From: Octopus bimaculoides
Taxonomy: Eukaryota
Reading direction: 5' to 3'
Assembly: GCF_001194135.2 (NCBI RefSeq)
Contig: NC_068982.1
Coordinates: forward strand, 69,848,097-69,902,740
Length of the DNA: 54,644 bases
A model generated the notes under the pieces. It made no database searches, was not told where the DNA came from, and saw only the letters and a program-made list of their open reading frames with translations. This document shows positions 511 to 37,974 of the stretch, piece by piece. A program made the translations under genes and the position numbers. Positions within the stretch are counted from its first letter, which is position 1. Each line of letters begins with the position of its first letter.

Positions 511-511
<1 letters not shown>

Positions 512-566
<55 letters not shown>
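512..566 (+). repeat. (AAT)n microsatellite
   Basis: Pure AAT tract read directly; it explains the poly-Tyr of ORF 470-682. Confidence 0.95.
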
Positions 567-568
<2 letters not shown>

Positions 569-834: not shown

Positions 835-859
835 TAGTAATAATCCTTCCTATTATAGG

Positions 860-1060: not shown

Positions 1061-1082
1061 CTAACAACAATAATAATAGTCA

Positions 1083-1345
1083 ACAACTCAACATCAAGAG
1101 GGGAAACTTTCAAGGAGACTGTATCACCCTTGCTGTTTATTGTTAGTATGTTACCACTCTCCCTGGTTTTGAAGCAGATTAGAGCTGGTTACAAACTGCT
1201 AGAGAGCATATGACCAATTAATCACCTGTTGTTTACGGACGATTTGCTGCTGATATTGCTGTTGAAGGCATTTAAGACCTGCCCTGTAATATGTAAACTC
1301 TACAAGGTAATGTGTGGTGATTCACCATATCACGGAATCATGAAC
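1083..1345 (+). mobile_element. R4/Dong-like (RLE) non-LTR retrotransposon RT fragment
   Basis: Frameshifted translation NIKRGNFQGD / SPLLFIVSMLPLSLVLKQIRAGYKL / INHLLFTDDLLL gives the RT QGD and (Y/F)xDD motifs in an R4-like context. Confidence 0.7.
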
Positions 1346-2215
1346 TAATCCCAATGATGCAAGAAAGTTAATTTGTACTTTTAGTGTCCATTGTATTAAC
1401 ACAAATATGCTGAATAATATATAACTCCTTTTCAGTAAACTAATCGATATTAACGATGTTGTCCACAATTCTCACGGGCGTTTACTGTATAACAAGGTCA
1501 TCCGTTTCTTCTATACATAAACAATCTCAAAATAAACTTTCGGTTTTAAAGAAAAACATTCTAGTGTCGTTCATTGCTTATTTAGTCAAGTTACAGAACA
1601 TTATTTTACTTTCATTTTATGATGCCAATTTCTGCCGACTTCATTAGTTACTTTTTCTGGGTCATAAAACGAAACATCACCCTGAAATACTTTTAGAAAT
1701 ATATTTTTCTCACAAACACTTACTAAGTTCCGCACAAACAATGTCGTGTACTGTCCACAGATGGAAAATTAAAGCGAAGATGAAAATTTTCCACTTTGTA
1801 AATAAGTAAGATTAAAAGTTATCTCCCTTGGCAACAATTCTTCGAAAAATACAAGTTTTTCTTATTTTCTTTCCGTATCTAATTCAAATTTAGATGAAAA
1901 TCTTATCCATTTCCTTAATCAGACTCTGATGGAATAGAATGTTCTTCATTTTTATAACCTCTGCATGATCTCTTCGCTTTAAAAAAAAAAAAGATATGAT
2001 GCTGGAATTATTGGCGAATAATAAGACTTGTGAGAAAGACATAAGGGTAGATAACTCAGAAAGGAGATTTGATACTTGTCTATATCTCTGTGCGTGCGTG
2101 TTTTGTTTTTGTTTGTTTGTTTTTTTCTCTCTTTTTAATTTAGAGTTACTTTCAACCGGCCTCCTGCTAGATAGCGAGCTTGTGAAGGAAAGCATCTATC
2201 TTTGTTCATTATCCT

Positions 2216-3110
2216 TTAAATCTTAAGACGGTCTTGCAGACTTTTATAGTTCCTGATATGATTATTTGTAGTGGTATGAATTGAGAAGTTATATTCTCTC
2301 CCCAAGAACCCAGTTTCAGCCATAATTTGTTCCAGGCGGGTTTGTATATACCCTGTTACTCCAATAATAATAGGTACGAAACTGAAAGTATATTTTGGGT
2401 ATTGAATTTGCAAATTCTTTATCAATAGTCCTTTCTACTGTATTTTTCTAACCACATTGGCAGCTGATTTTCACAACAGAACATATCTTTTCCTTGCAGT
2501 ACCAGAATATCTGGCTGGTTGTATTTTTACTTGGTAGCTGTTTTAATTCTTAAATTTCACAAGCCCTCTTTTGACTCACCAGTCTTAATATAGCCAACTT
2601 CGTTAATTGATGTTTTCTTCTTTATTATCCTGTTCCAGGCTGTTCCACTGCAATATGCCTCATGGGAAGATAATTTCAGAAAGACATTCTCTTTCTGTTG
2701 GCAATAATGTAGTTGATGTCTTCAGTCATGGTTTTACATTTGTTGTCTATCAATATTTTCTGCCTGGTGGAGAACTCTTGTTCTTGAATTGCATGGAGGT
2801 AGCACTTCAAAATGGGATGTGATAAACTTGTCGTTACTCCAAAATGGGATGTGATAACTTGTCGTTACATAATCAATTCCTTCTTTGGTTTGTGTCTTTC
2901 ATGCCAAGTACTTATGCATTATCTTCTCAGTGAACTGGCTCATTCTTTTTTCTTTTTTTGTTCTTTGCATAAAGAGAATTTATCAATGCTCCTTTGGGAG
3001 AGATCTGTATCTGCTTTTATTCCTTGCCTTTCCTCAAGATCATTAGCTGTTCTAATTATAGAGTAGCAAATTTCAGTGAGATAGTTACTGGTCTCCTTCC
3101 TCTGCTGAAA
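2216..3110 (-). mobile_element. Degenerate RLE-type non-LTR retrotransposon, 3' part (copy 1)
   Basis: Translates to IQYPKYTFSFVPIIIGVTGYIQ... Nucleotide-level similarity to 34790-35660 (for example GATACAGATCTCTCCC..AGGAGCATTG) in the opposite orientation. Confidence 0.7.
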
Positions 3111-4151
3111 ATGCTACTTCAGCATCACAATATGTACTACACAATATGTACAGATTTGAGATCACAGCCACCATCCTTGCATAAGAAATATAGCCTCAAC
3201 ACACAACACTCAACACTCACTGGAACTGAACTTGCCAGACAAGACAAGGCTTGCAGAAGAAAAACCCTGTGAATGAGGTAGAGATCAGAAGTCCTTCAGG
3301 ATCAGGCATGATTCCAAAAAGAGATGCAAAGGCCTGAGTTGACTCCACAGTGAAAACATGATTTGGTAGTAAGCTGACTGCCCCCACATATATATGTACA
3401 TCTACTCTGAAAGGAATGAGCAATCATTTGATGATGATGAAGCTTTTGATTTCTAGTAGACAGAAGTTTACCACTAATGTCAGCACTTTCACCTCCACCA
3501 AAACCAGTCTGGACAAGGTCAAGTACAAATTATTCTATGAAGATTTGAATATTGTCATCACCTCATCATCACTGTATTTACGCCTGCTTGAGCCCCACTC
3601 CAGCTTTCATGATCCACCACCTTTCCTGAAGCTTCTCTATCCACACTTTCATTTCTTGGACATGTTACCATAAGGGTATGTTGTGGTACGTTGTCATCAC
3701 TGTATTTACTTGTTTGAGCCCCACTTCAACCTCCTCCGTCCACCCATGTAAAATACGAATCTCTTCCACAAATATTAATCTATTCCTGCTTTCCCTCATC
3801 ATACTTTAACTTCTCAATACCTTGCTTAAAGCAACCACTTATTTGAGGAGCACTCTGAAGAAGAACCCAATACACATGGTAAAATGGTTGGCATTAGGAA
3901 AGAACATCCAGCCATAGAAATCATGCCAAAATTGTGACACTGGTAGACCAACTATGCTGGAATCCCTGAGCCAAGATAGATGATAGGATAAAGGTATAAT
4001 GAATAAGATGGATTGGAGATGGCTGTGGGGAGGAGGACGAAAGTTTGAAGGAGAGATAAGGATAAGAAGGGATAAGATATACATTAGGTAGCTCAACTGA
4101 CCACGATTGTTAATCAGTTTATAGGAATGTTAAAAGACTGTTGAATCACCT

Positions 4152-4186
<35 letters not shown>

Positions 4187-4189
4187 AAG

Positions 4190-4590
4190 TGTATATATAT
4201 TCTTTTATTCTTTTACTAGTTTCAGCTCAAAAACTGTGACCATGCTGGATCACTGCTATTAGATTTGCTACGCTTTTGTTATTTGAAAAACTTCCTCTGA
4301 TATGTGGAATTTGGTGAATGAGGGAGTTTGATGTTGCTTCCCTCATTTGCATTTCCTGCCATGAGATAGGTTCATCTGCAACACTTGACAAGAGGAGATC
4401 CACCCCATGTACATCTCTCAAACTTTTTGGGAAGATACTGAAATGCCATGGACACTTGAAACCCAAACTGTAGCATTATCTGTTCCTGTATCTTGATAGC
4501 AATGTTGGGATCTTTGGCACTATGCAGTAGCGCCCTGTTCTGATGTTTGTGTAACTTTCAATACTGAAGTTTGGTACAAATCCTTCCACG

Positions 4591-4596
<6 letters not shown>
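4190..4596 (-). mobile_element. CR1/L2-type LINE 3' end with SINE-like tail
   Basis: KIVEGFVPNFSIESYTNIRTGRYCIVPKIP...SLGFKCPWHFSIFPKSLRD...VADEP resembles a CR1/L2 ORF2 C-terminus. It ends in CAGCATGGTCACAG...GAAACTAGTAAAAGAATAAAAGAATA. Confidence 0.65.
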
Positions 4597-4656
<60 letters not shown>

Positions 4657-4959
4657 NNNNNNNNNNNNNNNNNNNNNNNNNNNNNNNNNNNNNNNNNNNN
4701 NNNNNNNNNNNNNNNNNNNNNNNNNNNNNNNNNNNNNNNNNNNNNNNNNNNNNNNNNNNNNNNNNNNNNNNNNNNNNNNNNNNNNNNNNNNNNNNNNNNC
4801 AAAACTATTTAATTCCAAGATTCATTTATGTTTAACAACTGAATGAATTTAATAACAACATCTAAATATGAAACGGCATGAAAATTGTTCAAACTGAAGT
4901 CCCTCTTGCGCAGCAAATTTCTCCCTTCGAGTCAATACAGAATTATAGATAGTATTTAT

Positions 4960-5002
4960 GGAAGTTTGAACTACTGTCGGGTGACTTTTGGCCACCCCTT
5001 TA
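4960..5002. mobile_element. Probable Tc1/mariner terminal inverted repeat remnant
   Basis: AACTACTGTCGGGTGACTTTTGGCCACCCCT followed by TA, which resembles a mariner end with a TA target. No partner end found. Confidence 0.35.
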
Positions 5003-5389
5003 TATATAAAATACACATACATTCACATATATACATACATACACACATATATAATCTTTTCTACTCTAGGTACAAGGCCTGAAATTTTGGGGGAACGGGC
5101 CAGTCAATTAGGTCGACCCCAGTACGCAAATAATACTTAATTTATCGACCTCGAAAGGATGAAAGGCAAAGTCGACCTCAGCGGAATTTGAACTCACAAT
5201 GTAAATACCACTAAGCATTTCGCCCGGCGTGCTAACGTTTCTGTCATACGTACATATGTATGTATGTATGTATGTAGAGGTGCATGGCTTAGCAGTTAGC
5301 ATATTGTATTCATGATCATAGGATTGCGGTTTCAATTCCTGGACCAGGCAAAACTATGACTCAGGAAGGACTTTTAATCCTTTGATGCA

Positions 5390-5810
5390 TCTATACTCTT
5401 TTACTCTTTTACTTGTTTCAGTCATTTGACTGTGGCCATGCTGGAGCACCGCCTTTAATCGAGCAAATCGACCCCAAGACTTATTCTTTGTAAGCCTAGT
5501 ACTTATTCTATCGGTCCTTTTTGCTGAACCGCTAAGTAACGGGGACGTAAACACACCAGCATCAGTTGTCAAGCAATGTTGGGGGGACAAACATAGACAC
5601 ACAAACATATACACACACATATACATATATATATACATATATACGACGGGCTTCTTTAAGTTTCCGTCCACCAAATCCACTCACAAGGCTTTGGTTGGCA
5701 GAGGCTATAGTAGAAGACACTTTCCCAAGGTGCCACGCAGCGGGACTGAACCCAAAGCCATGTAGTTGGTAAGCAAGCTACTTACCACACAGCCACTCCT
5801 ACACCTATGT
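5390..5810 (-). mobile_element. SINE family C (~420 bp, bipartite with internal (TA)/(CA) microsatellite)
   Basis: Conserved blocks GGCACCTTGGG...AAGTGTCTTCTACTATAGCC and AAGGCGGTGCTCCAGCATGGCC...TGACTGAAACAAGTAAAAGAGTA. Other approximate copies: 16511-16765, 24475-24870, 28790-29180, 31600-31995, 52550-52850, 53640-54005. Confidence 0.8.
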
Positions 5811-8564
5811 GTACATATATATGAAATAGACAGTTTATGGTTTCCAGGTCAATGCCTGTCATTTCAGTCTTCCCCAGTGTTACTAGAACAAAAAAGAAAT
5901 TCACTCAAAATATCGTAATCTTCCTTCTACTGATAAAATAGATTAATCAACTATAGACAAGTTAAAAGATATATCTGAAGTCAGGGGAAAGTAACGTAAA
6001 ACGGCATTATTAGAAAAAAAAATAGTTCCATATGTTACAAATCAGTCGGTAAATGTCTGAAAGCAGCTTTTGGCAAAGTTGTAAATAAATAAATAAAAAT
6101 ACATATATAAGATAAGATAAAAAAAAATTGTGAATTTGTGAAATAAATATGAAAGCAAGATAGCTAGAGTTATGTCCCTTGTAACAGGTGATCGTGTGGA
6201 ATATTCGACTAGTTTTGTGCGTGGCTCTCTCTCTCTCTCTCTCTCTCTCTGCGTGCGTGCGTGCATAGATTGCCGGCTAGACAAGCAAACAGACGTAAGT
6301 AAAATGTTATCATCATTATTATTTAACGTACGTTAATTGTATTTATTTATGAAAGCACACAAAAAAAACTGTGCAGTATATACACACAAACACACATAAC
6401 TATCTATCTAGTGAACTAGCTGCGGATGCACAGACAAAAACAGATAACTGTGCACCTTAGTATGTATTTATGAAGACTAAAAATTTATAGGTATGTGTGT
6501 ATGTGTGCATGCCCACACATATACATAAATGCAGACATGTATAAGTGTATGGATGCTTGCCCACATAAATACTACATGCATTTAGCATATGACAAGGCCC
6601 TAGGTCTATCATATTTTAACCCTGATGAAATACACTGCCTTTGTTTCAATTACTTTTGAAACTAATGAAGAATTTAGTCAAATAAGTTCATCACTATTAA
6701 ATCTCGTGTGAAAGCAGCAAGCTGACAGAATCATTTGGATGCCAGGCAGAATGCTTAGTAACACCTCACCCATCTTTATGTTCTGGGTTCAAATTTTGCT
6801 GAGGTCAACTTTGCCGTTCATCCTTTCAGGGTCGATAAAATAAGTACAAGTGAAATACTGGCACCAATGTGATTGACTAGCACTCACCCTTGAAATTGCT
6901 GGCCTCATGCCAAAATTTGAAACCAATATTAACAGGAAATTCTAATAAAGGGTTTTAATCCTTTACCATTTAAACTGTCCATATCCAACTCAAATGTTCT
7001 CCCTTTTCTATGTTCAAACTGGCTATATCTGGCCACTCACACCTACCCCCACAATGTCTTTCTAACAAATAAAAAACCAAACCATTGAAATCTTGAAGCT
7101 GTGAATAATGCATGATTAATTCAAAACAATGGGAATAGATAAGCATTATATTTGACAAAGGAATCATCATCATCATCGTCGTCGTCATTTAACATTTGTT
7201 TTCCATGTTGGCATGGGTTGGACGGTTTGACAGGAGCTGACCAGCTGAAGAGCTGTTCAGGCTCTATGCTAAAAGGTTAATTTAGATCACCTCAAAACAG
7301 GAGGCTTGTCTCATAGAACCAAAGTTAGCCTCAAGCAGGTTTGTAGCAAAAGGGTCAAGCTGGGTTCATTTTCATATATTGTCATTAATCTTTTTATTTT
7401 TTGTTTAAGAACAATAACTTTTCAAGATCCTTTATCATTTTAAAATCTTCCTGGGCTTATCCATTGGATGGAATGATCATATCAGCAGGCAGCATCATTA
7501 TCATCATCATTATATGCAGTCCATTTAACATGCTGGTATAGGTTGGACAGTTTGACCAGATGTGATGAACCAGAGAACTGTATCAAGCTCCAATTTCTGC
7601 CCTGGTAAGATTTTTATAGCTGGTGACACTGGCTTACGCTTGTTGTCTGATCCCCATATACTGCATTAATATTCCTCACATTTTCTGTTGCGTTGTTGCC
7701 ATTATTGAACTCATAAAACTAAATATGCTGAATATGCTCCTTTGTCACTTCCATTGTAGCTTTGAAAAAATAACTGTTAAAATCGAACTGCATTCTTCAA
7801 AACTTGCACTAAGAATAAGTACAAGGTAAAATTACTACCTGCTTTTATAGCAAGTTGATGCAGGTAGTTTATCCCATCCCCTCCAACTTTTGGTTCATGC
7901 AACTGAAAAAAAACGCAATATTTATGGGATGACCCAATAAATAATGGTTTCAGTGTCTAGGTTTGTTTTGCAATATAATGTGCTGGTGTAATAGTTTCTT
8001 GTTGTACCCCAGCCAGTGAAAACGTGTCGAACTCATATGTCAATTATAACAAATGTTACAATTTTTGTATTTTATATCTAAATTTGGAAACTGCTAAATG
8101 CTGGTGAAGACTTCTATCCCTCAAGTCATCACATCTTTGGTATTCCACTGGGTCAAGACTGGGGAAACCAAGAACATGTTTATGTCTGCTTGTGACTATA
8201 CAGGCTTCTAAAACAATTAGTAAAGATATGGTACAAGCTACCAAGTCATGCTTGCTTGTGAGTGACAGCTAAGCATACCTGTATGAGATACTTTCAAAAA
8301 GTATCCAATTTTACTTCTCGCCAAAACTAATGCCACATGGGCAAAATCCTTTAGGTGGGAAGTGACATCTCCCTTCCTGCGAAGAGAGGACTGATATCAA
8401 TAGAAGACTGCATAGAGAGTGGATGCACATGGCTTAGTGGTTAGGGTATTGGACTCATGATCGTAAGATTGTGGTTTCAATTCCTGGACTGGGTAACGCA
8501 TCATCTTCTTGAGCAAAACAATTCATTTCACATTACCCTGATCCACTCAGCTGGAATACTTTTT

Positions 8565-9472
8565 ACTGTATAGAGATGGCAGAACATGATATAGAAGTGA
8601 ATGTGAAGAATGGTACCAAAAGACTGTTTTCAGCTACCAGAGGAGAGAAGGAAGCTGTGGAGACTGCAATGGAATACAAGAAAAAAGAAAACAGGTGCAA
8701 GAAAGAACTATCTGGGGAAAAGAACTGCATGGTCAGCATCTTAGACAAATGCAAGATGAGTTTAGGATATGGCTGAAGAATGGAAACCTTAAGAAAGAAA
8801 TGGAAGCACTTATAAGGGCTGCTCAAAACCACTTATTGTGGATGAATATCAGTAAGGCAAAAATAGACAAATCTGAAAAAAAGTGCAAAGTGCAGAATAT
8901 GTAATGAGAAAGAGGAATCAGTTATGCACATAAGTCCCTGTAGTCTTTTGGTACAAAAGGGAATAAAGACATAGACATTATTCTGTGGCCAGGACATTAT
9001 ACTGGCACATATTATGATAAAGAGAATTTGAGGTAGGAAAAAATGGTACAAACATCAAACAGAGAGTACAATCAGGATAAGACTTTATGGGATTTTAGTG
9101 TACAGACTGATCAGGAACTTCATTCAAGGTAACCAAATATTATTGTTCTGGACAAGGGGAAAAAAGAGTGCATCATCATTGATGCGTCTATGTCTGCAGA
9201 CATGAGTGTAACAGTTAAAGAACAAAAGAAAATAGGAAAATACCAGGATTTAGCTAGGGAAATACGGAAACTGTGGAGGGTGTGTACAAAAGTAATCTTG
9301 GTCATCATAAGTGCCCTAGGTACATTCACCAACAGTTTGGCAGTTTTCTCATTGAGATTGATGTAACTATGAGAGTTGCGTTAATTCAGAAATCTGCTCT
9401 GTTGGCAACAGCAAGAATTGTAAGAAAGGTCCTTCATATCTAAGGTAACTGGTTGTGGCCTGGTACACACCA

Positions 9473-9527
<55 letters not shown>
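8565..9527 (+). mobile_element. 5'-truncated R4/Dong-like retrotransposon ending in an (AAT)n tail
   Basis: WLKNGNLKKEMEALIRAAQNHLL..SKAKIDKSEKKCK (zinc-knuckle region), then LWDFSVQTD...IIVLDKGKKECIIIDAS...KEQKKIGKYQDLAREIRKLW (restriction-like endonuclease region). A short 3' UTR runs directly into (AAT)n at about 9475-9527. Confidence 0.8.
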
Positions 9528-9530
<3 letters not shown>

Positions 9531-9798
9531 TGATGATGATAAATTAATATTTTATTTATGCACCCTTTTCAAGCCTAGCCAGGCTCATGGGCCCGGTTTC
9601 CCGGTTTCTATGGCATATGTGTTCCCCCCAGCTGGACAGGACGCCAGTCCATCGCAAATAAATTAATAAGTTGATTAATATTAATACAAATGGAATTAAT
9701 ATGCCTTCTCAAGAAACATAGAAAATCAGAAGAAACATTTAAGCTAAACACTTGATCCAAAGACAAACTGTGAAGACAATTATAATAGTGCAAATTAC

Positions 9799-9930
9799 CT
9801 CAAGCTGGTCAACTAATTGCATCTCATATGTCAGCTGTTTGTCATGCAGTTCCTCAAGTTTTTTGCGAAATTCAGCCATTTTGCTTTCATACTCTGACAT
9901 TTCTGTGACAAAGGTGAGGTCCTCAAACGT
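9799..9930 (-). CDS. DRC3: DRC3 coding exon (TFEDL...LTYEMQLVDQLE), 132 nt, phase 0-0
   Basis: Acceptor TTTTACAG and donor GTAATT. 44 codons, open. The end matches the vertebrate DRC3 motif MTLEMQLVEQLE. Confidence 0.9.
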
Positions 9931-10214
9931 CTGTAAAATATGAGCAAAAGCTAAATATAAATTTTAAATTTTGTCCCATTCATTTATGGGTTTTCCTTGT
10001 CAAGCAAAGAAGCAAAAAAAAAAAGAATCCCAGAAGTAAGTTTTGAAGGAATATTGAACCTTATCATAAACAAGATGTTGCATGGCAGAGGAGAAAGGAA
10101 ATATGCCACAGGTATATTTCTTCACATCCATGCATCTTATATAAAAAGAGGACAATGATGATGATGATGATGATGAGAACCATTATAATAACTATGATGA
10201 TAATGATGATTTTT

Positions 10215-10593
10215 GCTGGCACTTTGTCGCTTGCGACGTCGAGGGTTCCAGTTGATCCGATCAACGGAACAGCCTGCTCGTGAAATTAACGTGCAAGTGG
10301 CTGAGCACTCCACAGACACATGTACCCTTAATGTAGTTCTCAGGGATATTCAGCGTGACACAGTGTGACAAGGCTGACCCTTTGAATTACAGGCACAACA
10401 GAAACAGGAAGTAAGAGTGAGAGAAAGTTGTGGGGAAAGAGTACAGCAGGGTTCGCCACTACCCTCTGCCAGAGCCTCGTGGAGCTTTTAGGTATTTTCG
10501 CTCAATAAACACTCAACGCCCGGTCTGGAAATCGAAACTGCAATCCTATGACCACGAGTCCGCTGCCCTAACCACTGGGCCATTGTGCCTCCA
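10215..10593 (-). mobile_element. SINE family A (~380 bp, tRNA-derived head, (CAA)n tail)
   Basis: Head GGAGGCACAATGGCCCAGTGGTTAGGGCAGCGGAC...GTTTCGATTTCC carries A/B boxes. Highly similar to 13601-13998, 18387-18767 and 25958-26358. Confidence 0.85.
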
Positions 10594-17956: not shown

Positions 17957-18131
17957 CTTGTCTTTGTATTCAATGAATTCATTGAAAGCTTTAGTAGACA
18001 AATCCTTGTTCTCTGCTTTCGCATCTTCTACACATTGCCAAAATGTATCCACTTCATCTTTTATTTTGATGTGTTCCACAGTGCCAAAATTGAAGATTTG
18101 ATTAGACAAAGCTAATATTTTTGCTTTGAAA
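17957..18131 (-). CDS. DRC3: DRC3 coding exon (FKAKILALSNQIFNFG...FIEYKDK), 175 nt, phase 2-0
   Basis: Donor AAG|GTAAGA at 17956. 1 nt plus 58 open codons align to vertebrate YKDKFVIICVNIFEYG...ELDTF. The acceptor is non-canonical (..CTCCAT|) and follows a U12 branch point. Confidence 0.88.
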
Positions 18132-18286
18132 ATGGAGAAGTTAAGGAAATGTCAACATGGTCTCACAAATAAAAAAAAACTGGTTTCTAGCCCATTATAT
18201 GTAAACAAACATAAGTTGGTTTTGAAGTGCTGAAATGTATTGTAGAACAAGTAGAAAGATATATTTTTCAACGCATAAATACTGAC

Positions 18287-18382
18287 AGAACAGCATATAT
18301 AGGATAAAATCCTTTTAGAGCATGGCTGGTCACTGACAAATTTTTCTGCTCTAAAAGGATTTTATCCTATATATGCTGTTCT
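18287..18382. repeat. Perfect 36-bp inverted repeat with 24-nt loop
   Basis: AGAACAGCATATATAGGATAAAATCCTTTTAGAGCA (18287-18322) is the exact reverse complement of 18347-18382. Confidence 0.95.
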
Positions 18383-18386
18383 ATTG

Positions 18387-18767
18387 TGGAGGCGCAATAG
18401 CCCAGTGGTTAGGGCAGCAGACTCACGGTCATAGGATTGCAGTTTCAATTCCCAGACCGGGCCTTGTGAGTGTTTATTGAGCGAAAACACCTAAAGCTCC
18501 ACCAGGCTCTGGCAGGGGATGGTGGCGAACCCTGCTGTACTCTTTCACCACAACTTTCTCTCACTCTTACTTCCTGTTTCTGTTGTGCCTGTAATTCAAA
18601 GGGTCAGCCTTGTCACACTGTGTCATGCTGAATATCCCTAAGAACTATGTTAAGGGTACACGTGTCTGTGGAGTCCTCAGCCACTTGCACGTTAATTTCA
18701 CAAGTAGGCTGTTCCGTCGATCGGATCAACTGGAACCCTTGACGTCGCAAGCGACGAAGTGCCAACA
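18387..18767 (+). mobile_element. SINE family A copy with 10-bp target-site duplication
   Basis: Full-length element. GCTGTTCTAT occurs at 18376-18385 and 18769-18778. Confidence 0.88.
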
Positions 18768-19901
18768 AGCTGTTCTATCAGAATTTACATGTTGAAAAAT
18801 ATAGCTTCTATTCATTGTAAATCAAAAATGTGAAGAAACAATTGAATGTTTTATCTATGAACACATTGACCTTCCAATAAGACTCAAGTAACTATGCATC
18901 TGGGGAGGAGATTCCACAATGGTACAGTCATCATCATTATCATCACTTAATGTTCCCTTTTCCATGCATGCATGGGTTGGACAGATTTGATTAATTATAA
19001 TTTTTTTTTCCTTACAAATTACAAGTTTATCTTTAGCTAATCTGTATTTAACCCTTTAGCATTCAGATTACTCTGACAAATGTAATGCTTATTTATTCAC
19101 ATTGCTTTTGAATTAATCATGCATTATCTCATGGCTTTGAGATTTCAATGATGTGGTTGTTTATTTTTAAAATAGAATAACATTGTAGGGGAGGTGCAAG
19201 AGGCCAGATCAGGCCAGTTTGAAAATAAAACAGGTAAAATATTTGGGCTAGATATACCTTTCTACTCTAGGCACAAGGCCCGAAATTTTTTGGGGAGAGT
19301 GCCAGTAGATTAGATCGATCCCAGTATGCAACTGGTACTTAATTTATCGACCCCAAAAGGACGAAAGGCAAAGTTGACCTCAGTGGAATTTGAATTCAGA
19401 ACATAAAGACAGACAAAATACCACTAAGCATTTCCCCCAGCATGCTAACATCTCTGCCAGCTCGCTGCCTTTATTTGGGCCAGATATAGTCAGTTTAAAT
19501 GCTAATCAGAAAACATTGGTATTTATTTAACCAGCAAGCAGCAGTTTTATTAATATCTAGTTTTCTATGCTTGGGTGAGTGTATACTGAAGCAGAGATTC
19601 TATGACCAAATGCCCTTCCTGTCACCAACTCCCACTTGTTTCCAACTAGGGTAATTATCTCCCACTCTACTGAACAATCAACAACCTGAACATGTTATGT
19701 GTAAAGAACTGAAATCAAATGACTCTGTATGAATGAGCCCTTTGTTAAAAAGATCACTCAACAAGTCAAGAAACCCAAACATGCTTTCATGGTGGACTAC
19801 AAGCAGATGATACTGACAGGAAGTCATAGTTTACAAACCAGTGAAAATGAGGATGCTCTGTCCCCACCTTCTCATAGTTCAATCCCTTAGTATGATGCTA
19901 C

Positions 19902-20165
19902 GCAGCTCACAATATTAAAGATCCGCTTTGACTGAATGGAAGTAAAGTAGAGATGGGGAAGGTTTTACCACATAAAAAACACCAAATACACTTATTTAAG
20001 TGGTTGGTGTTCAGAAGGGCATCAAACCAATAGAAACCCTGCCAAAGCAGACACTGGAATTTGGTACAGTCCTCTGGCTTGCCAGCTCCTGTCAAACTGT
20101 CCAAACCATGCTAACATGTCAAATGAACATTAAATAATGACGACGATGACGACCATCATCATCAT
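19902..20165 (+). repeat. Direct repeat, copy 2
   Basis: Near-identical to 17110-17373, offset by 2792 bp. Confidence 0.9.
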
Positions 20166-20697
20166 CGTCATCATTTAAAGTATGAAAGAATGGGCCCAAA
20201 CAGGTTTCTTACGGTAGAACCACATGGCTACTCAACTTACAGAAGAGAGAGTGAGAGTAACTAAGATGGAACTGGAAAGAGAAATGAAATATCCAAGAAG
20301 GTGAATAAAAGTTGAGTGGGGACAAAAGAACAAGAACTGTGGACAGGTAGAGGTCACAAGAATGTACAGGGAGAGTGGGAGATGAATAGGGGTAATGGGG
20401 TGGATATAATGAATGAAGAAGAAGGGTTTAGAGGTGGTTGATAATAAATATGAGTTAGAGGGAGTGCAGGGAAGAGTAGGTGGTGATTGTATAGATTAGG
20501 TGAAAATGGAAAAGGAAGAATGGACTCAGCTTCCTAAAGACTTGCTTCTACTATGTAATGCTTACTACAAAAATTCCACATTAAAGAATAAATAAGTCAC
20601 TTTTTACCTTTGTACTATGTGATTTACCTATGGATCAATTTGTTAAAATGGTATATATGAAAATGCATCAAGAGATATACGATAAAGTCATGGATAT

Positions 20698-20810
20698 TAG
20701 ACCATTTCTTCTGCAATACCAGGCATTTCATTCAGTTTCCTGCCTTCAACATCATCTGCATACAAGCTTGTAAAAAGAAGATCATCTTTGAAGCTTTCTA
20801 CATATGCCTC
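20698..20810 (-). CDS. DRC3: DRC3 coding exon (EAYVESFKDDLLFTSLYADDVEGRKLNEMPGIAEEMV+TA), 113 nt, phase 0-2
   Basis: Acceptor ATTTTGCAG. Aligns to vertebrate TAFVEHLNGSFLFDSMYAEDSEGNNLSYLPGVGELLE. Ends at the U12 donor ATATCC. Confidence 0.9.
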
Positions 20811-24260: not shown

Positions 24261-24704
24261 TTATCTGTCTACTTGTCTAACCCTGCACATATTGTTTGTT
24301 ATTTCACATCTTGGTGCCGCTATTCTTAGCAGAATAAAAATTCCAATGCATTTGTTATTGCTGTTGCTGCTGTGATAGTACTGTTTACACTGGTTGAGAC
24401 AGAGGTAGTTGTGTGATGTTTGTGTAGTGTCTATATTTTGTGATGGCCAATGTCAGAGTAGTGATTGTGATATATCTTTTTATCCTTCACTTGTTTCAGT
24501 CATTAGACTGCGGTCATGCTGGAGCACTGCCTTGAAAATTTTTAGTCAAATGAAGTGATTTCAGTACTTATTTTACCCTTTTTACTAGCACATATTCTAT
24601 CAGTCTCTTTGCTGAACTGTTAAATTATGGGGACATAAACACACCAACGTCAGTTGTCAAGCAATGGCACAAAGACACACACACTAGCAAATATATAAAT
24701 ATAC

Positions 24705-25245
24705 AAGCTTCTTTTAATTTCTGTCTACCTAATCCTATCACAAGACTTTGGTCAGCCTGAGGCTATAGTAGAAGACACTTGCCCAAGGTGTCGTGCAGTA
24801 GAACTGAACCCAGAACCACGTGGTTGGGAAGCAAGTTTCTTACTATACAGACACAGTTGCACCTATAATATCTATTCTTGTTTATCATGGGAGTTTGGTC
24901 TTAAAGAAGCACAGTGATAAATGAATCATCTTCATGTAGTTTGTAAAGGAAATGAATGGCAAATTCATTGACATGACAAGCTTCTTTCAGTTTCTGTCTG
25001 CCAAATCCAATCACAAGGCTTTGGTCAGCCCAAGGCTATAGTAGAAGACATTTACCCAAGGTGTCACACAGTAGGACTGAACCCAGAACCATGTGATTGG
25101 GAAACAAGTTTCTTACCACACAACCACAGCTGTGCCTATATATCCATTCTCGTTTATCATGAGAGTTTCGTCTCAAAAAAGCAGTGATAAATGAATCATC
25201 TTCATGCACTTTGTGAAGGAGACATATGGCAAATTCATTGACACC
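24705..25245 (+). repeat. Old ~273-bp tandem duplication (SINE-C half plus unique flank)
   Basis: AAGCTTCTTT...CAGTGATAAATGAATCATCTTCATG...TGGCAAATTCATTGACA occurs at 24705 and at 24978. Confidence 0.85.
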
Positions 25246-30875: not shown

Positions 30876-33760
30876 NNNNNNNNNNNNNNNNNNNNNNNNN
30901 NNNNNNNNNNNNNNNNNNNNNNNNNNNNNNNNNNNNNNNNNNNNNNNNNNNNNNNNNNNNNNNNNNNNNNNNNNNNNNNNNNNNNNNNNNNNNNNNNNNN
31001 NNNNNNNNNNNNNNNNNNNNNNNNNNNNNNNNNNNNNNNNNNNNNNNNNNNNNNNNNNNNNNNNNNNNNNNNNNNNNNNNNNNNNNNNNNNNNNNNNNNN
31101 NNNNNNNNNNNNNNNNNNNNNNNNNNNNNNNNNNNNNNNNNNNNNNNNNNNNNNNNNNNNNNNNNNNNNNNNNNNNNNNNNNNNNNNNNNNNNNNNNNNN
31201 NNNNNNNNNNNNNNNNNNNNNNNNNNNNNNNNNNNNNNNNNNNNNNNNNNNNNNNNNNNNNNNNNNNNNNNNNNNNNNNNNNNNNNNNNNNNNNNNNNNN
31301 NNNNNNNNNNNNNNNNNNNNNNNNNNNNNNNNNNNNNNNNNNNNNNNNNNNNNNNNNNNNNNNNNNNNNNNNNNNNNNNNNNNNNNNNNNNNNNNNNNNN
31401 NNNNNNNNNNNNNNNNNNNNNNNNNNNNNNNNNNNNNNNNNNNNNNNNNNNNNNNNNNNNNNNNNNNNNNNNNNNNNNNNNNNNNNNNNNNNNNNNNNNN
31501 NNNNNNNNNNNNNNNNNNNNNNNNNNNNNNNNNNNNNNNNNNNNNNNNNNNNNNNNNNNNNNNNNNNNNNNNNNNNNNNNNNNNNNNNNNNNNNNTATAT
31601 ATATATGTATATATATTCTTTTATTCTTTTACTGGTTTCAGTCATCTAACTGCAGCTTTCTGGGGATTTATCAAACAAATTGACCCTAAGGTTTATTTTT
31701 TAAGCCCAGTACTTATTCTATCAGTCTCTTTTGTTGAACTGCTAAGTTACAGGGATGTAAACATACCAACACTGGTTGTCAAGTGATGATGGGGGGGGGG
31801 ACAAACATAGACACAAAGATATATACATATATAGACAACAAGCTTCTTTCAGTTTCTGTCTACCAAATCCACTCATGAGGTTTTGGTCAGCCTGAGGCTA
31901 TAGAGGAAGACACTTGCCCAAGGTGTCACACAGTGGGACTGAACTTGGAACCATGTGATTGGGAAGCAAGCTTCTTACCACACAGCCATGCCTAAAAAAT
32001 AGATGGATTGTGGTTCACTACAGCTGTTTCAGACATGTTTTTTATTGATGGGCAGAAGTGTTGCATCGCACAAAAAAAGTGTTTTCATCAGGTAAATATT
32101 AGAACTTCTCAAGAACACGTACATAGTGCCAAATGACTCAGCCCACCCAAATGTGGTCAGAGAGTGAAAAGTTCAAGTTAGTATCAAGTTTATAATGAGG
32201 AAATCATTAAAGGTAAAGGGGTAAAGCAGGGTAAAGGTCCTTCCCAAGTTATACAGAATCATAGGGCTGGTTTCTTGGTTTCTCCAGTGTATATATTCCC
32301 ACTGGATAGGACGCTGGTCGATTGCAGGATTACTCATTTTTGCCAGCTGAGTGGACTGGAGCAATGTAAAATGAAGTGTTTTGTTCAAGAACACAACACT
32401 TCACCTGGTCCAAGAATTGAAACCACAATCTTACAATAATGAGTCCAGCACCCCTAACCACTAAGCCATACACCTCCACATTCATTAAAGAGCCTGGATC
32501 AGAAAGGGAAATTGATGAAGTATGTAGAAGCAAGTGAAGAGAGAAAGACTAAAATGAAGAGAGAGAAGACAGTACATGATCTTGTTTGACCTCGTAAAGG
32601 GTTATAAATAAAATTAATGTTGTTTCTAAATAGTTGACAGGGTCTTTATATTGATAAACAAGAGTAATCATTTAATATACATAATTACAGAATAGCTACT
32701 ATTAGTTTCACACTTTTAAGATACATTAAATTAACAGATTTATATGACATGCCATGTATCTTCTCCAAGCAGTCTTTCAGGCTCAGTTCATCATATGTCA
32801 GATATGTTTAAAAACCAGGACACTGGGCAATGAGAAAACATGAGAGAAGAACGAGAAGAAAAAAATATAATGCGAAGAAGGTTGATGCAAAATGTGAAAC
32901 AAAAATAAAGGAAAGAAAAGTAAAAATAACCAAGATCATCCTCTTTGCTTGTAGAAATCATAATTAATGTAGTTTATGCAGAGTCTGTGAGAGAGCAACT
33001 CAATATGAAGCAGGCAGTATCTTCTAGTTATATTATGATGATGAAAATGATGACGACGACAATGATGGTGACAATGATGATGATTTTCTTTATTATATAT
33101 GTAGTGAATATATATAGTGAGAACTACAGGGATAAGTCTTGGTCTTGAAAAGTTTGATGTTGCAAGTAACAAGAGAAATATATAATTAGAAAGTGTTTTG
33201 TTAGCTCTCAGTATTGATACTTCTCTGCAATATGACCAAAGATTAACATTGACTCAGTCACCATGACAATGATGTCTTTGTTGTCATTGTCACTGATGTC
33301 ATCATCACCATTATCATCACTACCAACACCAATACCACAATCATCATCACCACCACCACCACCATCACCAGTACTATTATCATCATCTTTTAGCATGCAT
33401 GTTCCATGCTGGCATAGAGTGGACAGTTTGGCACCTAGAAATGCATTGTGCTCCAATGTCTGCTTTGGCATGGTTTCTATGGGTGGATACACTTCATGAC
33501 ATCAGCTACTTTACAGTATTGGGCACTTTTTTTTTTGTGGAACCAGCTCTAGTGAGATCACCATGCAGATCACAAGACTAGTAGGTAGGCCAAAATACAA
33601 AGAGAGGCAATTTTATGCCAGGAGATCAGAAGTGAAAGTATGAGAGGAAAGACCAGAACAGAATAGATTTGTTGCTGTAAAGGCATTACATGGCTACTCA
33701 CAAAGAGAGAGTAAGAGTTAGTAGGATGGAACTTGAAAGAGAGAACGTTCTCTTACTCAC

Positions 33761-34789: not shown

Positions 34790-35660
34790 GATAGTTAATG
34801 AATTTGAGAAGAGGTGTGAAATAAGAGCTGATACAGATCTCTCCCCCAAGGAGCATTGGTAAAGTCTATTTGTCAGGAAAACCAAGTATCACAATGGAGC
34901 AGTTCACTAAGAAGATAGTACTTGGATACTTGGCATGAAAAACATGAACCATAGAAGGGATTGATCGTGTCATGAGCTTGGCATGGAGTACAGACAAGTT
35001 TATGACATTCTACTTTGAAGGCTACCTCCATACAATTCAAGAACAAGTGTTCCCCACCAAGTACCTACAGCATAAGAAGCAGAAAACATTAACAGGCAAC
35101 AAATGTAAGCTGTGTAAGACCAAGACTGTAGATACTAACTACATTATTGCCAACTATGAGAGAATGTTTTCCCATGAAGTATGATGTTGTGGCCAGAACA
35201 GTCTGGAACAGGATAATAAAGAAGAAAACACCTACAGACCAATTTGACTATTTTGAGGCTGTTGGGTCAAAAGAATATTGGTGGCACTTAAAAATTAAAT
35301 CAACCACCAAGTTAACACACAACCAGCCAGATGTAGTTGCATGAAATCAGAAGGGAAAGGTAAGTTCTGCTTTGGAAATCAGCTGCCCTCTGGACACCAA
35401 TGTGGTTAGAAAAATACAAGGAAAAGAGGAATCATTAATAAAGAGTTTGCAAATCCAGTACCCAAGGTACGCTTTCAGTTTCATACCTTATTATTATTGA
35501 AACAGCAGGATACATACAAAACTACCTAGAGCAAAGTATGGCTGAACTTGGGATCCTAGGGAGAGAATGCAAATCTTTAATTCATATTCAACAAATGATC
35601 ATGATATCAGGGACTATAAAAATCTACAGGACCTTTTTCAGATTTAAATGGAAATGGTTA
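34790..35660 (+). mobile_element. Degenerate RLE-type non-LTR retrotransposon, 3' part (copy 2)
   Basis: EGYLHTIQEQVFPTKY...NKCKLCKTKTVDTNYII (Cys knuckle), HNQPDVVA...EISCPLDTN (restriction-like endonuclease PD..D motif). Same family as 2216-3110. Confidence 0.75.
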
Positions 35661-35844
35661 AAATGTGATGCTTTCCTTCACAACCTTACTACCAAGTACT
35701 CTAAAATTAAAAAGAGAAAGTGAAAGAGAACAAATGAATGAGCAGGCAGGTGGGTGAACAAACAAACAAATGAATGTACATACATACATACATACCAAAC
35801 CATCAATGGAACTGTAAAGATATGTAAAACTTTCCAAAAGTTTA

Positions 35845-36009
35845 GCACATAAATACATATGCATGCATCTAGACATGAAAATATATACATAAAAACGTAT
35901 CCATAAAACAAACATACAAATCTGCACATAAATACATATGCATACGCCTAGACATGAAAATATATACATAAAAACGCATCCATAAAACAAACATACAAAT
36001 CTGCACATA
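35845..36009 (+). repeat. 79-bp tandem minisatellite, about 2 copies
   Basis: GCACATAAATACATATGCAT...CATACAAATCT units start at 35845 and 35924, with a partial unit at 36003. Confidence 0.9.
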
Positions 36010-36375
36010 CACTAACACCAAATACTGCACACACACACATATGCACAAATACCTAGATGATGTTGATAAAAGTTCCAATGAAGGAGCCTTGAATCTGTGT
36101 TAGAGTCCGGCTCTTTCTCTATTGACAAGAAATACAGAAATGAAACTGATCGATAACATACATACATACATACTATGGGCTTCTTCTAGCTTACGTCTAC
36201 CAAATCCATTCTTAAGGCTTTGGTCAGCTAAAAGTGCTCCAGCAGTATGGTTGGGAAGCAAGTCTCTTAACCTCACAACCATGCTGGCACCTTTAACTGA
36301 ATGAATAAAAACTGCTGAGTGAATGTCAGTGGAATGGGGGAAAAAGAATTTCAAATGTAAAAAAATATGTCTTAC

Positions 36376-36492
36376 CAAGCCACACAAGGTTTACAAGTAG
36401 ATCCAATCCTTCTATTTTTTCAATCACATTATTATCAAGTTGTAGTTTGGTCAGTTTAATGAAGCACCATAAGTTGTCGATCTTCAGAATAT
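36376..36492 (-). CDS. DRC3: DRC3 LRR exon (NILKIDNLWCFIKLTKLQLDNNVIEKIEGLDLLVNLVWL), 117 nt, phase 1-1
   Basis: Near-identical to vertebrate NILRIDNLWQFENLRKLQLDNNIIEKIEGLENLAHLVWL. Acceptor TTTGTCAG and donor G|GTAAGA. Confidence 0.95.
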
Positions 36493-36829
36493 CTGACAAA
36501 TAGCATATATGCTGCATTTTAATTAACATTGAAAGCAGTAAATCATTAACAACATACTATTTCATTAACAACATATAAAATATGGGAACCAAACCAGCAG
36601 CAGCAACAACATTATTTTAATGTTCACTTTTCCATGCTTGCATGGGTCAGACAGAATTTGTTCAGCCAGGTTTTCTATGGGCGGATACCCTTCCTGTTGC
36701 CAATCCTCACCTGTTTCCAAAGAAATATTTTCCCATGGCTGGACAAGTTTACATGGAAGATTGGGAACAAAGGACACTGCTTGTATGATGGTGAGATTTG
36801 TTTACAATAATCATGTATCATCAAGGCAC

Positions 36830-36864
<35 letters not shown>

Positions 36865-36939
36865 CAAACATCTCCAACAGACTTCTTTCAGTTTCTGTCC
36901 AGCAATTTCATTCACAAGATTTAGTCGACCATTGCCGGG

Positions 36940-37082
36940 TCTTCTCACACACTGCATATTTCCAAAGGTCTTGGTCACTAGACGCTGCCTCGGTGAGGCC
37001 TAATGTTCGATGGTCATGCTTCACCACCTCCTCCCAGGTCTTCCTGGGTCTACCTCTTCCACAGGGTCCCTCAACCGCTAGG

Positions 37083-37085
<3 letters not shown>
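36940..37085 (-). mobile_element. RTE-clade LINE 3' end fragment
   Basis: TLAVEGPCGRGRPRKTWEEVVKHDHRTLGL...LWKYAV matches the RTE ORF C-terminal GRPRKTW motif. A related fragment lies at about 40855-41060. Confidence 0.75.
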
Positions 37086-37124
<39 letters not shown>

Positions 37125-37757
37125 NNNNNNNNNNNNNNNNNNNNNNNNNNNNNNNNNNNNNNNNNNNNNNNNNNNNNNNNNNNNNNNNNNNNNNNNNNNN
37201 NNNNNNNNNNNNNNNNNNNNNNNNNNNNNNNNNNNNNNNNNNNNNNNNNNNNNNNNNNNNNNNNNNNNNNNNNNNNNNNNNNNNNNNNNNNNNNNNNNNN
37301 NNNNNNNNNNNNNNNNNNNNNNNNNNNNNNNNNNNNNNNNNNNNNNNNNNNNNNNNNNNNNNNNNNNNNNNNNNNNNNNNNNNNNNNNNNNNNNNNNNNN
37401 NNNNNNNNNNNNNNNNNNNNNNNNNNNNNNNNNNNNNNNNNNNNNNNNNNNNNNNNNNNNNNNNNNNNNNNNNNNNNNNNNNNNNNNNNNNNNNNNNNNN
37501 NNNNNNNNNNNNNNNNNNNNNNNNNNNNNNNNNNNNNNNNNNNNNNNNNNNNNNNNNNNNNNNNNNNNNNNNNNNNNNNNNNNNNNNNNNNNNNNNNNNN
37601 NNNNNNNNNNNNNNNNNNNNNNNNNNNNNNNNNNNNNNNNNNNNNNNNNNNNNNNNNNNNNNNNNNNNNNNNNNNNNNNNNNNNNNNNNNNNNNNNNNNN
37701 NNNNNNNNNNNNNNNNNNNNNNNNNNNNNNNNNNNNNNNNNNNNNNNNNNNNNNNNN

Positions 37758-37974
37758 GGGCCACTCCAAAACTGTGATTTTCTTGCTAGAAAACCAAGCT
37801 TTAGTGCTTTTTGACACATGCTTGGGATCATTATCTTGTTGAAACTTTAAATTGCGACCCTAGCGCAGAGCAGTTTTGGAGTGGCCCAGCCAGTCTCCAG
37901 ACCTCAATCCTATAGAAAATTATACAAAATATATAAATTTTCAAAGGGGGTGTAGACTTTTGCAAGGCACTGTA
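37758..37974. mobile_element. Rearranged Tc1 (DD34E) transposon remnant with one terminal repeat
   Basis: The minus strand reads [18 protein letters not shown]...VLEWP. The plus strand at 37873-37920 reads VLEWPSQSPDLNPIEN. The end TTTTGCAAGGCACTG-TA is a Tc1-type terminus. Confidence 0.8.

What the first reader, a model, noticed from the sequence alone, without database searches (positions are those of the whole stretch)
18132..20697. Minor-spliceosome intron in DRC3 with rare AT-AT ends
Seen: the upstream exon ends GTC TA followed by ATATCCATG. The downstream exon is preceded by TTTCCTTAAC-TTCTCCAT. Joining TA to T TTC AAA GCA gives EEMVYFKAKIL, which aligns without gaps to vertebrate ELLETYKDKFV. 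The nearest AG (TTCAAAG|C) shifts the frame into a stop. Established: ATATCCT(T) and TCCTTAAC are the U11 and U12 recognition motifs, and most U12 introns are GT-AG or AT-AC, with AT-AT a rare subclass. Inference: this is a U12 intron whose AC terminus became AT by a C>T change. Standard gene predictors would probably mis-annotate it.
Basis: partly seen in the sequence, partly recalled or inferred. Interest (0 to 1): 0.85.

Follow-up and report, generated by a model that had tools for sequence, protein, structure and literature searches.

The report
Octopus DRC3 minor intron, AT-AT ends
One intron of the octopus cilia gene DRC3 is an ancient minor-spliceosome (U12) intron whose last base has changed from the usual C to T, a rare but already catalogued variant that the public RefSeq gene model for this species already splices this way.

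Summary
The window is Octopus bimaculoides, and the minus strand carries DRC3/LRRC48. The intron at 18132-20697 (2566 nt) starts ATATCCATG and ends TTCCTTAAC-TTCTCCAT. Removing it is the only splice with recognised terminal dinucleotides that gives a product of orthologue length. That product is exactly RefSeq XP_014770374.1. The orthologous intron sits in the same codon and phase in Nematostella, Xenopus, amphioxus, Lingula, abalone, a chiton and a bivalve. There it has textbook U12 signals (ATATCCTTT, TCCTTRAY) and AT-AC ends (AT-AA in the chiton). O. sinensis and O. vulgaris, both independent assemblies, carry the same terminal T, so it is not an assembly error. Argonauta has GTATCCTTT and the same CCAT|TTTCA 3' context. 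AT-AT is a known class: about 0.95% of conserved animal minor introns. About 17% of annotated DRC3 orthologues, including O. vulgaris, are mis-modelled at this junction, but this species' RefSeq model is not. I could not obtain direct transcript evidence for Octopus. Verdict: a real, correctly read new member of a known rare subclass, of modest interest.

The parts
20698..20810 (-). DRC3 exon upstream of the intron (EAYVESF...GIAEEMV + TA of the Tyr codon). The acceptor is ttgcag|GAG. The exon ends in phase 2.
   Evidence: It aligns to vertebrate DRC3 residues about 238-275. It is an exact match to XP_014770374.1.
20689..20697 (-). U12-type 5' splice site ATATCCATG. Positions +1 to +6 match the consensus RTATCC. 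Positions +7 (A) and +9 (G) depart from ATATCCTTT.
   Evidence: The sequence is identical in O. sinensis and O. vulgaris. Orthologues have ATATCCTTT or GTATCCTTT at the same codon and phase.
18132..20697 (-). The intron itself: 2566 nt, phase 2, termini AT...AT.
   Evidence: It is the unique donor/acceptor solution that reproduces the protein. It is the only one of the enumerated terminal-dinucleotide classes that gives a product of orthologue length.
18140..18148 (-). U12 branch-point sequence TTCCTTAAC, a perfect match to TTCCTTRAY. The branch A (18141) is 9 nt from the last intron base.
   Evidence: The distance is within the 8-12 nt range seen in the orthologous introns. The published optimum is 11-13 nt (PMC3584512).
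18132..18133 (-). 3' terminal dinucleotide AT. The T at 18132 replaces the ancestral C.
   Evidence: T is present in three Octopus assemblies. AC lies a similar distance after the branch site in Solemya, Haliotis, Lingula, Branchiostoma, Xenopus and Nematostella.
17957..18131 (-). DRC3 exon downstream of the intron (T + FKAKILALSNQIFNFGTVEH...IEYKDK). The donor is AAG|gtaaga.
20718..20719 (-). Cryptic in-frame U2-type donor CCTG|GTATTG. The O. vulgaris gene model uses it, but it is probably not the main site.
   Evidence: Paired with the AG at 18112-18113 or at 18124-18125, it deletes 14 or 10 conserved residues.
18112..18113 (-). Cryptic acceptor ATATTAG|CT inside the downstream exon, the partner of the cryptic donor in the O. 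vulgaris model.
   Evidence: The other nearby AG (18124-18125) is not conserved: it reads AAT in O. sinensis and O. vulgaris.

Best explanation
Window 18132-20697 (minus strand) is the one minor-spliceosome (U12-type) intron found among the six Octopus bimaculoides DRC3 introns mapped in this window. It descends from an AT-AC intron that was already at this exact codon position in the cnidarian-bilaterian ancestor.

How it most likely works (inferred from established U12 biology, not shown here):
- U11 and then U6atac recognise the 5' site /ATATCC.
- U12 snRNA pairs with TTCCTTAAC and bulges the branch adenosine.
- The 3' cut falls a fixed short distance downstream (9 nt here), largely regardless of which dinucleotide is there.
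- Cleavage therefore falls after ...CTCCAT and joins TA to T to make a Tyr codon (EEMV-Y-FKAK).

In the octopod lineage the terminal C became T, giving AT-AT. In Octopus the 5' site also drifted at +7 and +9. The intron is therefore probably spliced less efficiently than its AT-AC ancestor (inference).
For: - Gene identity. Exons 1-3 hit DRC3 chains at E about 1e-50, and the junction fragment hits at E = 2.6e-15 without a gap.
- Annotation. The seven window exons, joined with this intron removed, give a 984-nt ORF equal to residues 1-328 of XP_014770374.1. All other boundaries are GT...AG.
- Uniqueness. The boundaries are the only solution for that protein. No GT-AG, GC-AG or AT-AC pairing gives a 96-residue product for these two exons.
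- Orthology. The intron is at the same codon in phase 2, with ATATCCTTT plus TCCTTRAY, in Nematostella, Xenopus, Branchiostoma, Lingula, Haliotis, Liolophura and Solemya. Argonauta has GTATCCTTT plus TTTCCTTGAC.
- Not an error. The same ATATCCATGAC...TTTCCTTAACTTCTCCAT|T is in O. sinensis and O. vulgaris.
- Spacing. The branch-A to 3'ss distance of 9 nt lies within the orthologue range of 8-12 nt.
- Conservation of the product. 104 of about 125 orthologues have the same spacing across the junction, and none of the disturbed models comes from a Logan transcript-length contig.
- Literature. The 5'ss and branch site define U12 introns, and non-canonical termini are spliced, often less efficiently (PMC3584512). 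AT-AT makes up 0.95% of conserved animal minor introns (PMC10639083 Table S1). Human and mouse examples include ERCC5 and Gpaa1, where the other species has AT-AC (PMC1557818). Molluscs are relatively rich in minor introns, and O. sinensis was among the species surveyed.
Against: - No Octopus transcript or RNA-seq junction could be examined. The junction rests on protein homology and on RefSeq models whose supporting evidence I could not see.
- The 5' site has two mismatches to the consensus (+7 A, +9 G).
- The 9-nt branch-to-3'ss distance is shorter than the published optimum of 11-13 nt.
- The pyrimidine-rich stretch CTTCTCCATTTTC followed by AG (18124-18125) resembles a U2 acceptor in O. 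bimaculoides.
- An in-frame cryptic GT-AG pair exists, and one annotation pipeline chose it.
- intronIC could not be run.
Confidence: 0.9

Rival explanations
1. The real splice is an ordinary U2-type GT-AG intron that uses the cryptic donor CCTG|GTATTG (intron starts at 20719) and the acceptor ATATTAG|CT (exon starts at 18111) or TTCAAAG|CA (exon starts at 18123). The protein would then lack 14 or 10 residues, as in the O. vulgaris annotation CAI9717620.1.
For: Both pairings are in frame. The O. vulgaris model reads ...NDMP|AVSNQ.... The TTAAC and pyrimidine stretch upstream of AG 18124-18125 could serve a U2 branch site and tract.
Against: The deleted residues (GIAEEMVYFKAKIL) are present at the same spacing in 104 of about 125 orthologues, and no Logan transcript-length contig is among the disturbed models. 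They also align to the solved vertebrate DRC3 chains. The donor GTATTG is weak. AG 18124-18125 is not conserved in O. sinensis or O. vulgaris. Two RefSeq models use the AT-AT junction. The U12 signals sit exactly where the ancient U12 intron lies in other phyla. This pairing could exist as a minor mis-splice product.
Confidence: 0.04
2. The intron is an ordinary AT-AC U12 intron, and the terminal T at 18132 is a sequencing or assembly error.
For: The window comes from a gapped draft assembly with four runs of N. A C>T miscall would be a single-base error.
Against: Two other independently sequenced Octopus genomes (GCA_006345805.1 and GCA_951406725.2) carry the same ...CTTCTCCAT|TTTCAAA. Argonauta has ...GACCAT|TTTCAGA.
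Confidence: 0.01
3. The intron is U12-type, but the degenerate 5' site and the AT terminus make 3' cleavage imprecise or inefficient. A large share of transcripts would then retain the intron or use the downstream AG (frameshift to a stop, then decay), and the AT-AT product would be only one of several outcomes.
For: Non-canonical termini usually lower U12 splicing efficiency, and U12 3'ss choice is error-prone (PMC3584512). There are two 5'ss mismatches. The AG 8 nt downstream in O. bimaculoides gives a premature stop.
Against: The reading frame is intact and the exons are conserved across three Octopus species and Argonauta, so a functional product must be made. The downstream AG is absent in O. 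sinensis and O. vulgaris. This rival concerns efficiency and does not change what the intron is.
Confidence: 0.05

Closest known systems
U12-type (minor-spliceosome) AT-AC introns: the orthologous DRC3 intron in Nematostella, Xenopus laevis, Branchiostoma, Lingula, Haliotis and Solemya
   Same: The codon and phase (2) are the same. The /ATATCC 5' site, the TCCTTRAY branch site and the short branch-to-3'ss distance (8-12 nt) are shared, and none has a distinct polypyrimidine tract.
   Different: The last base is T, not C. The 5' site is ATATCCATG, not ATATCCTTT. The intron is much longer (2.6 kb, against 0.2-0.6 kb in the other invertebrates).
Known AT-AT U12 introns, e.g. human ERCC5 and mouse Gpaa1, Zc3hdc6 and Slc9a8 (Sheth et al. 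2006, PMC1557818), and the 701 AT-AT cases among conserved animal minor introns (Larue & Roy 2023, PMC10639083 Table S1)
   Same: U12 5'ss and branch-site signals come with an AT 3' terminus. The intron differs by one nucleotide from an AT-AC orthologue in related species, the pattern those papers describe.
   Different: The gene and the lineage differ (DRC3, octopods). As far as my searches show, this specific intron has not been described in the literature.
Other non-canonical states of the same intron: Liolophura (chiton) AT-AA, and Argonauta GT-AT (my reading) or GT-AC (as annotated)
   Same: The position and the U12 signals are the same, and the terminal nucleotide varies while the rest of the signal is kept.
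   Different: The terminal bases differ. Argonauta has also switched the first base from A to G and keeps a consensus GTATCCTTT.

Membership tests
U12-type (minor) spliceosomal intron | 5' splice site matching /RTATCCTTT | tested here: met
   The site is /ATATCCATG. Positions +1 to +6 are exact and +8 matches; +7 (A) and +9 (G) do not, so 7 of 9 positions match. Orthologues have 9 of 9 at the same site. No PWM or intronIC score was computed.
U12-type (minor) spliceosomal intron | Branch-point sequence TCCTTRAY close to the 3' end | tested here: met
   TTCCTTAAC lies at 18148-18140. It is the only TCCTTAAC on this strand in the window.
U12-type (minor) spliceosomal intron | Short, constrained branch-site-to-3'ss distance (published optimum 11-13 nt) and no distinct polypyrimidine tract | tested here: met
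   The distance from the branch A to the last intron base is 9 nt. That is within the 8-12 nt seen in the nine orthologous introns but below the published optimum (PMC3584512). Only 8 nt separate TTAAC from the exon.
U12-type (minor) spliceosomal intron | Positional orthology with U12 introns in other species | tested here: met
   The intron is at the same codon, in phase 2, in all 11 other loci examined, from cnidarian to vertebrate.
U12-type (minor) spliceosomal intron | Removal depends on the U11/U12/U4atac/U6atac spliceosome | not testable with these tools
   This needs a splicing assay. The literature indicates that molluscs carry minor introns, and O. sinensis was among the species surveyed (PMC10639083).
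AT-AT subclass of U12 introns | Intron begins AT and ends AT, with boundaries placed unambiguously | tested here: met
   Only one donor/acceptor pair reproduces the protein. By inspection, shifting the boundaries by one base in either direction changes the mRNA.
AT-AT subclass of U12 introns | The terminal T is real in the genome | tested here: met
   It is identical in the O. bimaculoides, O. sinensis and O. vulgaris assemblies.
AT-AT subclass of U12 introns | The junction is observed in RNA | not tested
   No Octopus transcript contig was retrievable. Support is indirect: RefSeq models XP_014770374.1 and XP_029658548.1 use the junction, and homology supports it.

The most novel reading that the evidence does not exclude
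The octopod DRC3 intron may preserve successive intermediates of a U12 subtype switch at a single ancient intron. The series would be AT-AC (ancestral, most Metazoa), then AT-AT (Octopus, with a decaying 5' site), then GT-AT (Argonauta, if its true 3' site is the conserved CCAT| and not the annotated GAC|). The chiton's AT-AA would be an independent terminal change. That would be a natural series showing that the last base of a U12 intron can drift first, with the first base following, at one locus.
Probability: 0.45. Interest if true: 0.35.

Novelty: new member of a known kind. Interest (0 to 1): 0.27.

Why it matters
There are three modest reasons.

1. It is a clean case in which the terminal base of an ancient U12 intron has changed while its position and branch site stayed fixed. 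It can be followed across several metazoan phyla, from cnidarians to vertebrates. This fits the view that the 5' site and the branch site define minor introns, and that the terminal dinucleotides do not.
2. It has practical value for annotation. About one in six annotated DRC3 orthologues is wrong at exactly this junction, through deletions, read-through into the intron or split models. These include O. vulgaris, Pomacea, Lottia, Pinctada and Trichoplax.
3. DRC3 is a structural subunit of the ciliary nexin-dynein regulatory complex. A weakened minor intron could make its expression sensitive to minor-spliceosome activity, though that is speculation.

None of this overturns current knowledge. 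AT-AT introns are catalogued, and this species' RefSeq model is already correct.

Tried and rejected
- Homology search with the 96-aa junction peptide found nothing. The tool appears to return only proteins close to the query's length: a 148-aa query returned only hits of 260 aa or less. A 521-aa chimeric query was needed.
Run with exon 1 alone, it returned mostly single-exon fragments.
- Exon 4 was not found by tblastn. It turned out to lie in the assembly gap.
- C-terminal exons (residues 329 onward) were not found in the window, so the gene probably continues beyond the window.
- The Limulus (P0031) and Mya (P0288) loci were not on record.
- The Solemya locus L001 looked at first as if its AC 3' site was out of frame. 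This comes from homopolymer frameshifts in that copy, so its frame cannot be used.
- Conservation of the splice signals between O. bimaculoides and O. sinensis is not significant on its own at about 5% background divergence.
- Rfam found no RNA family in the window.
- Literature and supplement searches for DRC3/LRRC48 as a listed minor-intron gene found nothing usable. Human DRC3 was therefore not checked directly.
- An assembly error and a pseudogene were both considered and rejected.

Full report
**What is in the window.** The finding lies on the minus strand. Searches confirm each quoted string:
- the upstream exon ends ...GAA ATG GTC TA at 20698;
- the intron starts ATATCCATGAC at 20697;
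- it ends ...ATTTCCTTAACTTCTCCAT at 18132;
- the next exon starts T TTC AAA GCA at 18131.

The intron is 2566 nt. The joined exons translate to EAYVESF...GIAEEMVYFKAKILALSNQIF...EYKDK.

**Gene identity.** The N-terminal exons match solved DRC3 chains (9fqr_Qv and 8j07_3) at E about 1e-50. The junction fragment matches them at E = 2.6e-15 and 1.9e-13, with no gap across the junction (GIAEEMVYFKAKIL against GVGELLETYKDKFV).

I mapped seven exons:

| Exon | Window coordinates |
|---|---|
| 1 | 44250-44091 |
| 2 | 36492-36376 |
| 3 | 33927-33761 |
| 5 | 28769-28650 |
| 6 | 20810-20698 |
| 7 | 18131-17957 |
| 8 | 9930-9799 |

Joined, they form a 984-nt ORF. Its 328 residues are exactly the N-terminus of NCBI XP_014770374.1, "dynein regulatory complex subunit 3 [Octopus bimaculoides]". 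Every other boundary is GT...AG. Exon 4 is missing because it falls in the N gap at 30876-31595. The exons for residues 329 onward were not found in the window.

**Is the splice forced?** Given the protein, only one donor/acceptor pair is possible. I listed all in-frame, stop-free pairings of the classes GT-AG, GC-AG, AT-AC, AT-AG, AT-AA, AT-AT, GT-AC and GT-AT around the two exons. Only AT(20697)...AT(18132) gives the 96-residue product of orthologue length. The only GT-AG pairings within about 25 nt of the exon-7 start use the weak donor CCTG|GTATTG and delete 10 or 14 conserved residues; the other in-frame GT-AG pairings delete more. The nearest AG combined with the TA| donor gives a stop. 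That AG is also not conserved: it reads TTCAAAT in O. sinensis and O. vulgaris.

**Is it U12-type?** The branch site TTCCTTAAC is a perfect consensus and the only TCCTTAAC on this strand in 54.6 kb. It ends 8 nt before the exon, which puts the branch A 9 nt from the intron end. The 5' site has ATATCC at +1 to +6 but A at +7 and G at +9.

The decisive evidence is comparative. The orthologous intron lies in the same codon, in phase 2, in every locus I could fetch.

| Species | 5' site | Branch site and tail | Termini |
|---|---|---|---|
| Nematostella | AA\|ATATCCTTTT | TTCCTTAAC-TCTGTATAC | AT-AC |
| Xenopus laevis | TC\|ATATCCTTTA | CTCCTTAAC-CAGAGTCTTAC | AT-AC |
| Branchiostoma | GG\|ATATCCTTTA | TTCCTTAAT-TCTTGCCCCAC | AT-AC |
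| Lingula | GT\|ATATCCTTTT | CTCCTTGAC-TCATTTGTAC | AT-AC |
| Haliotis | GT\|ATATCCTTTT | TTCCTTAAC-ACGTTAC | AT-AC |
| Solemya | AC\|ATATCCTTTG | GCTTTAAC-AAGATTAC | AT-AC |
| Liolophura (chiton) | AG\|ATATCCTTTG | GCCTTAAC-AGGGGTTAA | AT-AA |
| Argonauta | TA\|GTATCCTTTT | TTTCCTTGAC-GTTTGAC(CAT) | GT-AC as annotated, or GT-AT |
| O. bimaculoides, O. sinensis, O. vulgaris | TA\|ATATCCATGA | TTTCCTTAAC-TTCTCCAT | AT-AT |

Branch-A to 3'ss distances in this set are 8-12 nt. This is an ancient minor intron, and Octopus carries a derived form of it.

**Is the terminal T real?** O. sinensis (GCA_006345805.1) and O. vulgaris (GCA_951406725.2) are independent assemblies. Both have the identical ATATCCATGAC...ACATTTCCTTAACTTCTCCAT|TTTCAAA. 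Argonauta has ...GACCAT|TTTCAGA at the homologous place. An assembly error is excluded, and the C>T change most likely predates the Octopus-Argonauta split.

**Argonauta.** Its annotated protein (EEMKYIFRTK) has one residue more than every well-modelled orthologue and implies GT-AC, a combination described as disfavoured (PMC3584512). Cutting 3 nt further on, after CCAT, gives EEMKYFRTK. That restores the universal spacing and implies GT-AT, a catalogued class (0.43% of conserved animal minor introns). I consider GT-AT more likely, but this is unverified.

**Annotation behaviour.** Of about 125 DRC3 orthologues retrieved, 104 have the standard 15-residue spacing across the junction, and none of the disturbed models comes from a Logan transcript-length contig. 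The other 21 are disturbed exactly here, through deletions, translated intron sequence or insertions. They include Pomacea, Nucella, Pinctada, Lottia, Bulinus, Trichoplax, Branchiostoma belcheri and O. vulgaris CAI9717620.1 (NDMP|AVSNQ). It does not apply to the RefSeq models of O. bimaculoides and O. sinensis.

**What is known.**
- Turunen et al. (PMC3584512) state that the 5'ss and the branch site define U12 introns. Non-canonical termini support U12 splicing, often with reduced efficiency. The branch-to-3'ss optimum is 11-13 nt.
- Sheth et al. (PMC1557818) list 6 human and 6 mouse AT-AT U12 introns. Several are AT-AC in the other species.
[quoted passage not shown] They note that molluscs are relatively rich in minor introns and list O. 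sinensis among the species they surveyed.

I found no paper or supplement that names DRC3/LRRC48 as a minor-intron gene. This specific intron therefore appears to be undescribed, although it is annotated.

**Mechanism.**
- Shown: the signals, their positions, the orthology, the reality of the T, and the uniqueness of the junction.
- Inferred from established U12 biology: U11 and U6atac recognise /ATATCC, U12 pairs with TTCCTTAAC, and the 3' cut is set mainly by distance, so AT is tolerated.
- Inferred further: the two 5'ss mismatches, the AT terminus and the 9-nt distance probably lower efficiency.

The gene is not decaying. The frame is intact in all octopods examined, and O. bimaculoides differs from O. 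sinensis at 25 of 984 exon bases, 9 of them in synonymous codon changes and 16 in nonsynonymous ones.

**Limits.** I could not examine any Octopus RNA. The junction rests on homology and on RefSeq models whose evidence I could not see. intronIC was not run. Human DRC3 was not checked directly; Xenopus stands in for vertebrates.

**Verdict.** It is a new member of a known rare subclass, already spliced correctly in the reference annotation, and of modest interest.

Noticed in passing
window 30876-31595 (N gap): DRC3 exon 4 (about 49 residues, ILYLRKFKKL...KEEF in O. sinensis) is missing from this assembly. O. sinensis sequence flanking its exon 4 aligns up to 31596 on one side and from about 30818 on the other. 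This is why RefSeq XP_014770374.1 is 472 aa while the O. sinensis protein is 521 aa.
   Followed up: yes
window 49423-49512 (+ strand): The first coding exon of a TOM1-like (VHS/GAT) gene (MAALFGHGNPLSTPVGQLIGK) lies head-to-head with the DRC3 start at 44250. The same neighbour lies upstream of DRC3 on the opposite strand in Solemya (L001) and O. vulgaris (L010), which suggests conserved microsynteny.
   Followed up: partly
L003 (Argonauta hians) about 9837-10301: The same intron begins GTATCCTTTT. The annotated 3' end (TTTGAC|C, giving GT-AC) adds one residue relative to all well-modelled orthologues. Cutting after the conserved CCAT (giving GT-AT) restores the spacing, so the annotation is probably 3 nt off.
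   Followed up: partly
L004 (Liolophura sinensis) 2610-3113: The orthologous intron in the chiton is AT-AA (ATATCCTTTG...GCCTTAAC-AGGGGTTAA|T). This is the unique solution for the RefSeq protein, so the terminal base of this one intron is C, A or T in different molluscs.
   Followed up: partly
L001 (Solemya velum) 19258-20125: This DRC3 copy has frameshifts at homopolymer runs inside the exon (for example TGGGGAG near 20035), and its gene model is split into a 243-aa and a 113-aa gene at the U12 intron. A second full-length Solemya copy (P0305) is also mis-modelled at the junction. The cause could be assembly error or a decaying duplicate.
   Followed up: partly
L010 (O. vulgaris) about 35251-37960; proteins P0379, P0187, P0173, P0272 and others: Of about 125 annotated DRC3 orthologues, 21 are disturbed exactly at this U12 junction (deletions, translated intron, insertions). 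O. vulgaris CAI9717620.1 splices CCTG|GTATTG...ATATTAG|CT and loses 14 conserved residues.
   Followed up: yes
window, many places on both strands (e.g. 24699-24914, 24972-25184, 52525-52947, 53667-53936): A recurring ORF motif ...VEDTCPRC[HR]AVGLNP(E/K)P... and abundant (CA)n/(TG)n microsatellites indicate an interspersed repeat family scattered through the DRC3 introns and flanks.
   Followed up: no
window exons compared with L002 (O. sinensis): Exon divergence between O. bimaculoides and O. sinensis is 25 of 984 nt, with 9 nt differences in synonymous codon changes and 16 in nonsynonymous ones (16 amino-acid changes, mostly conservative). That is a fairly high nonsynonymous share for a conserved axonemal protein, but the sample is small.
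   Followed up: partly
window 1-9798: tblastn found no DRC3 exons for residues 329 onward (for example the conserved FVDKDT...SHD.HLLKIDN block). The 3' part of the gene appears to lie beyond the window's low-coordinate end.
   Followed up: partly
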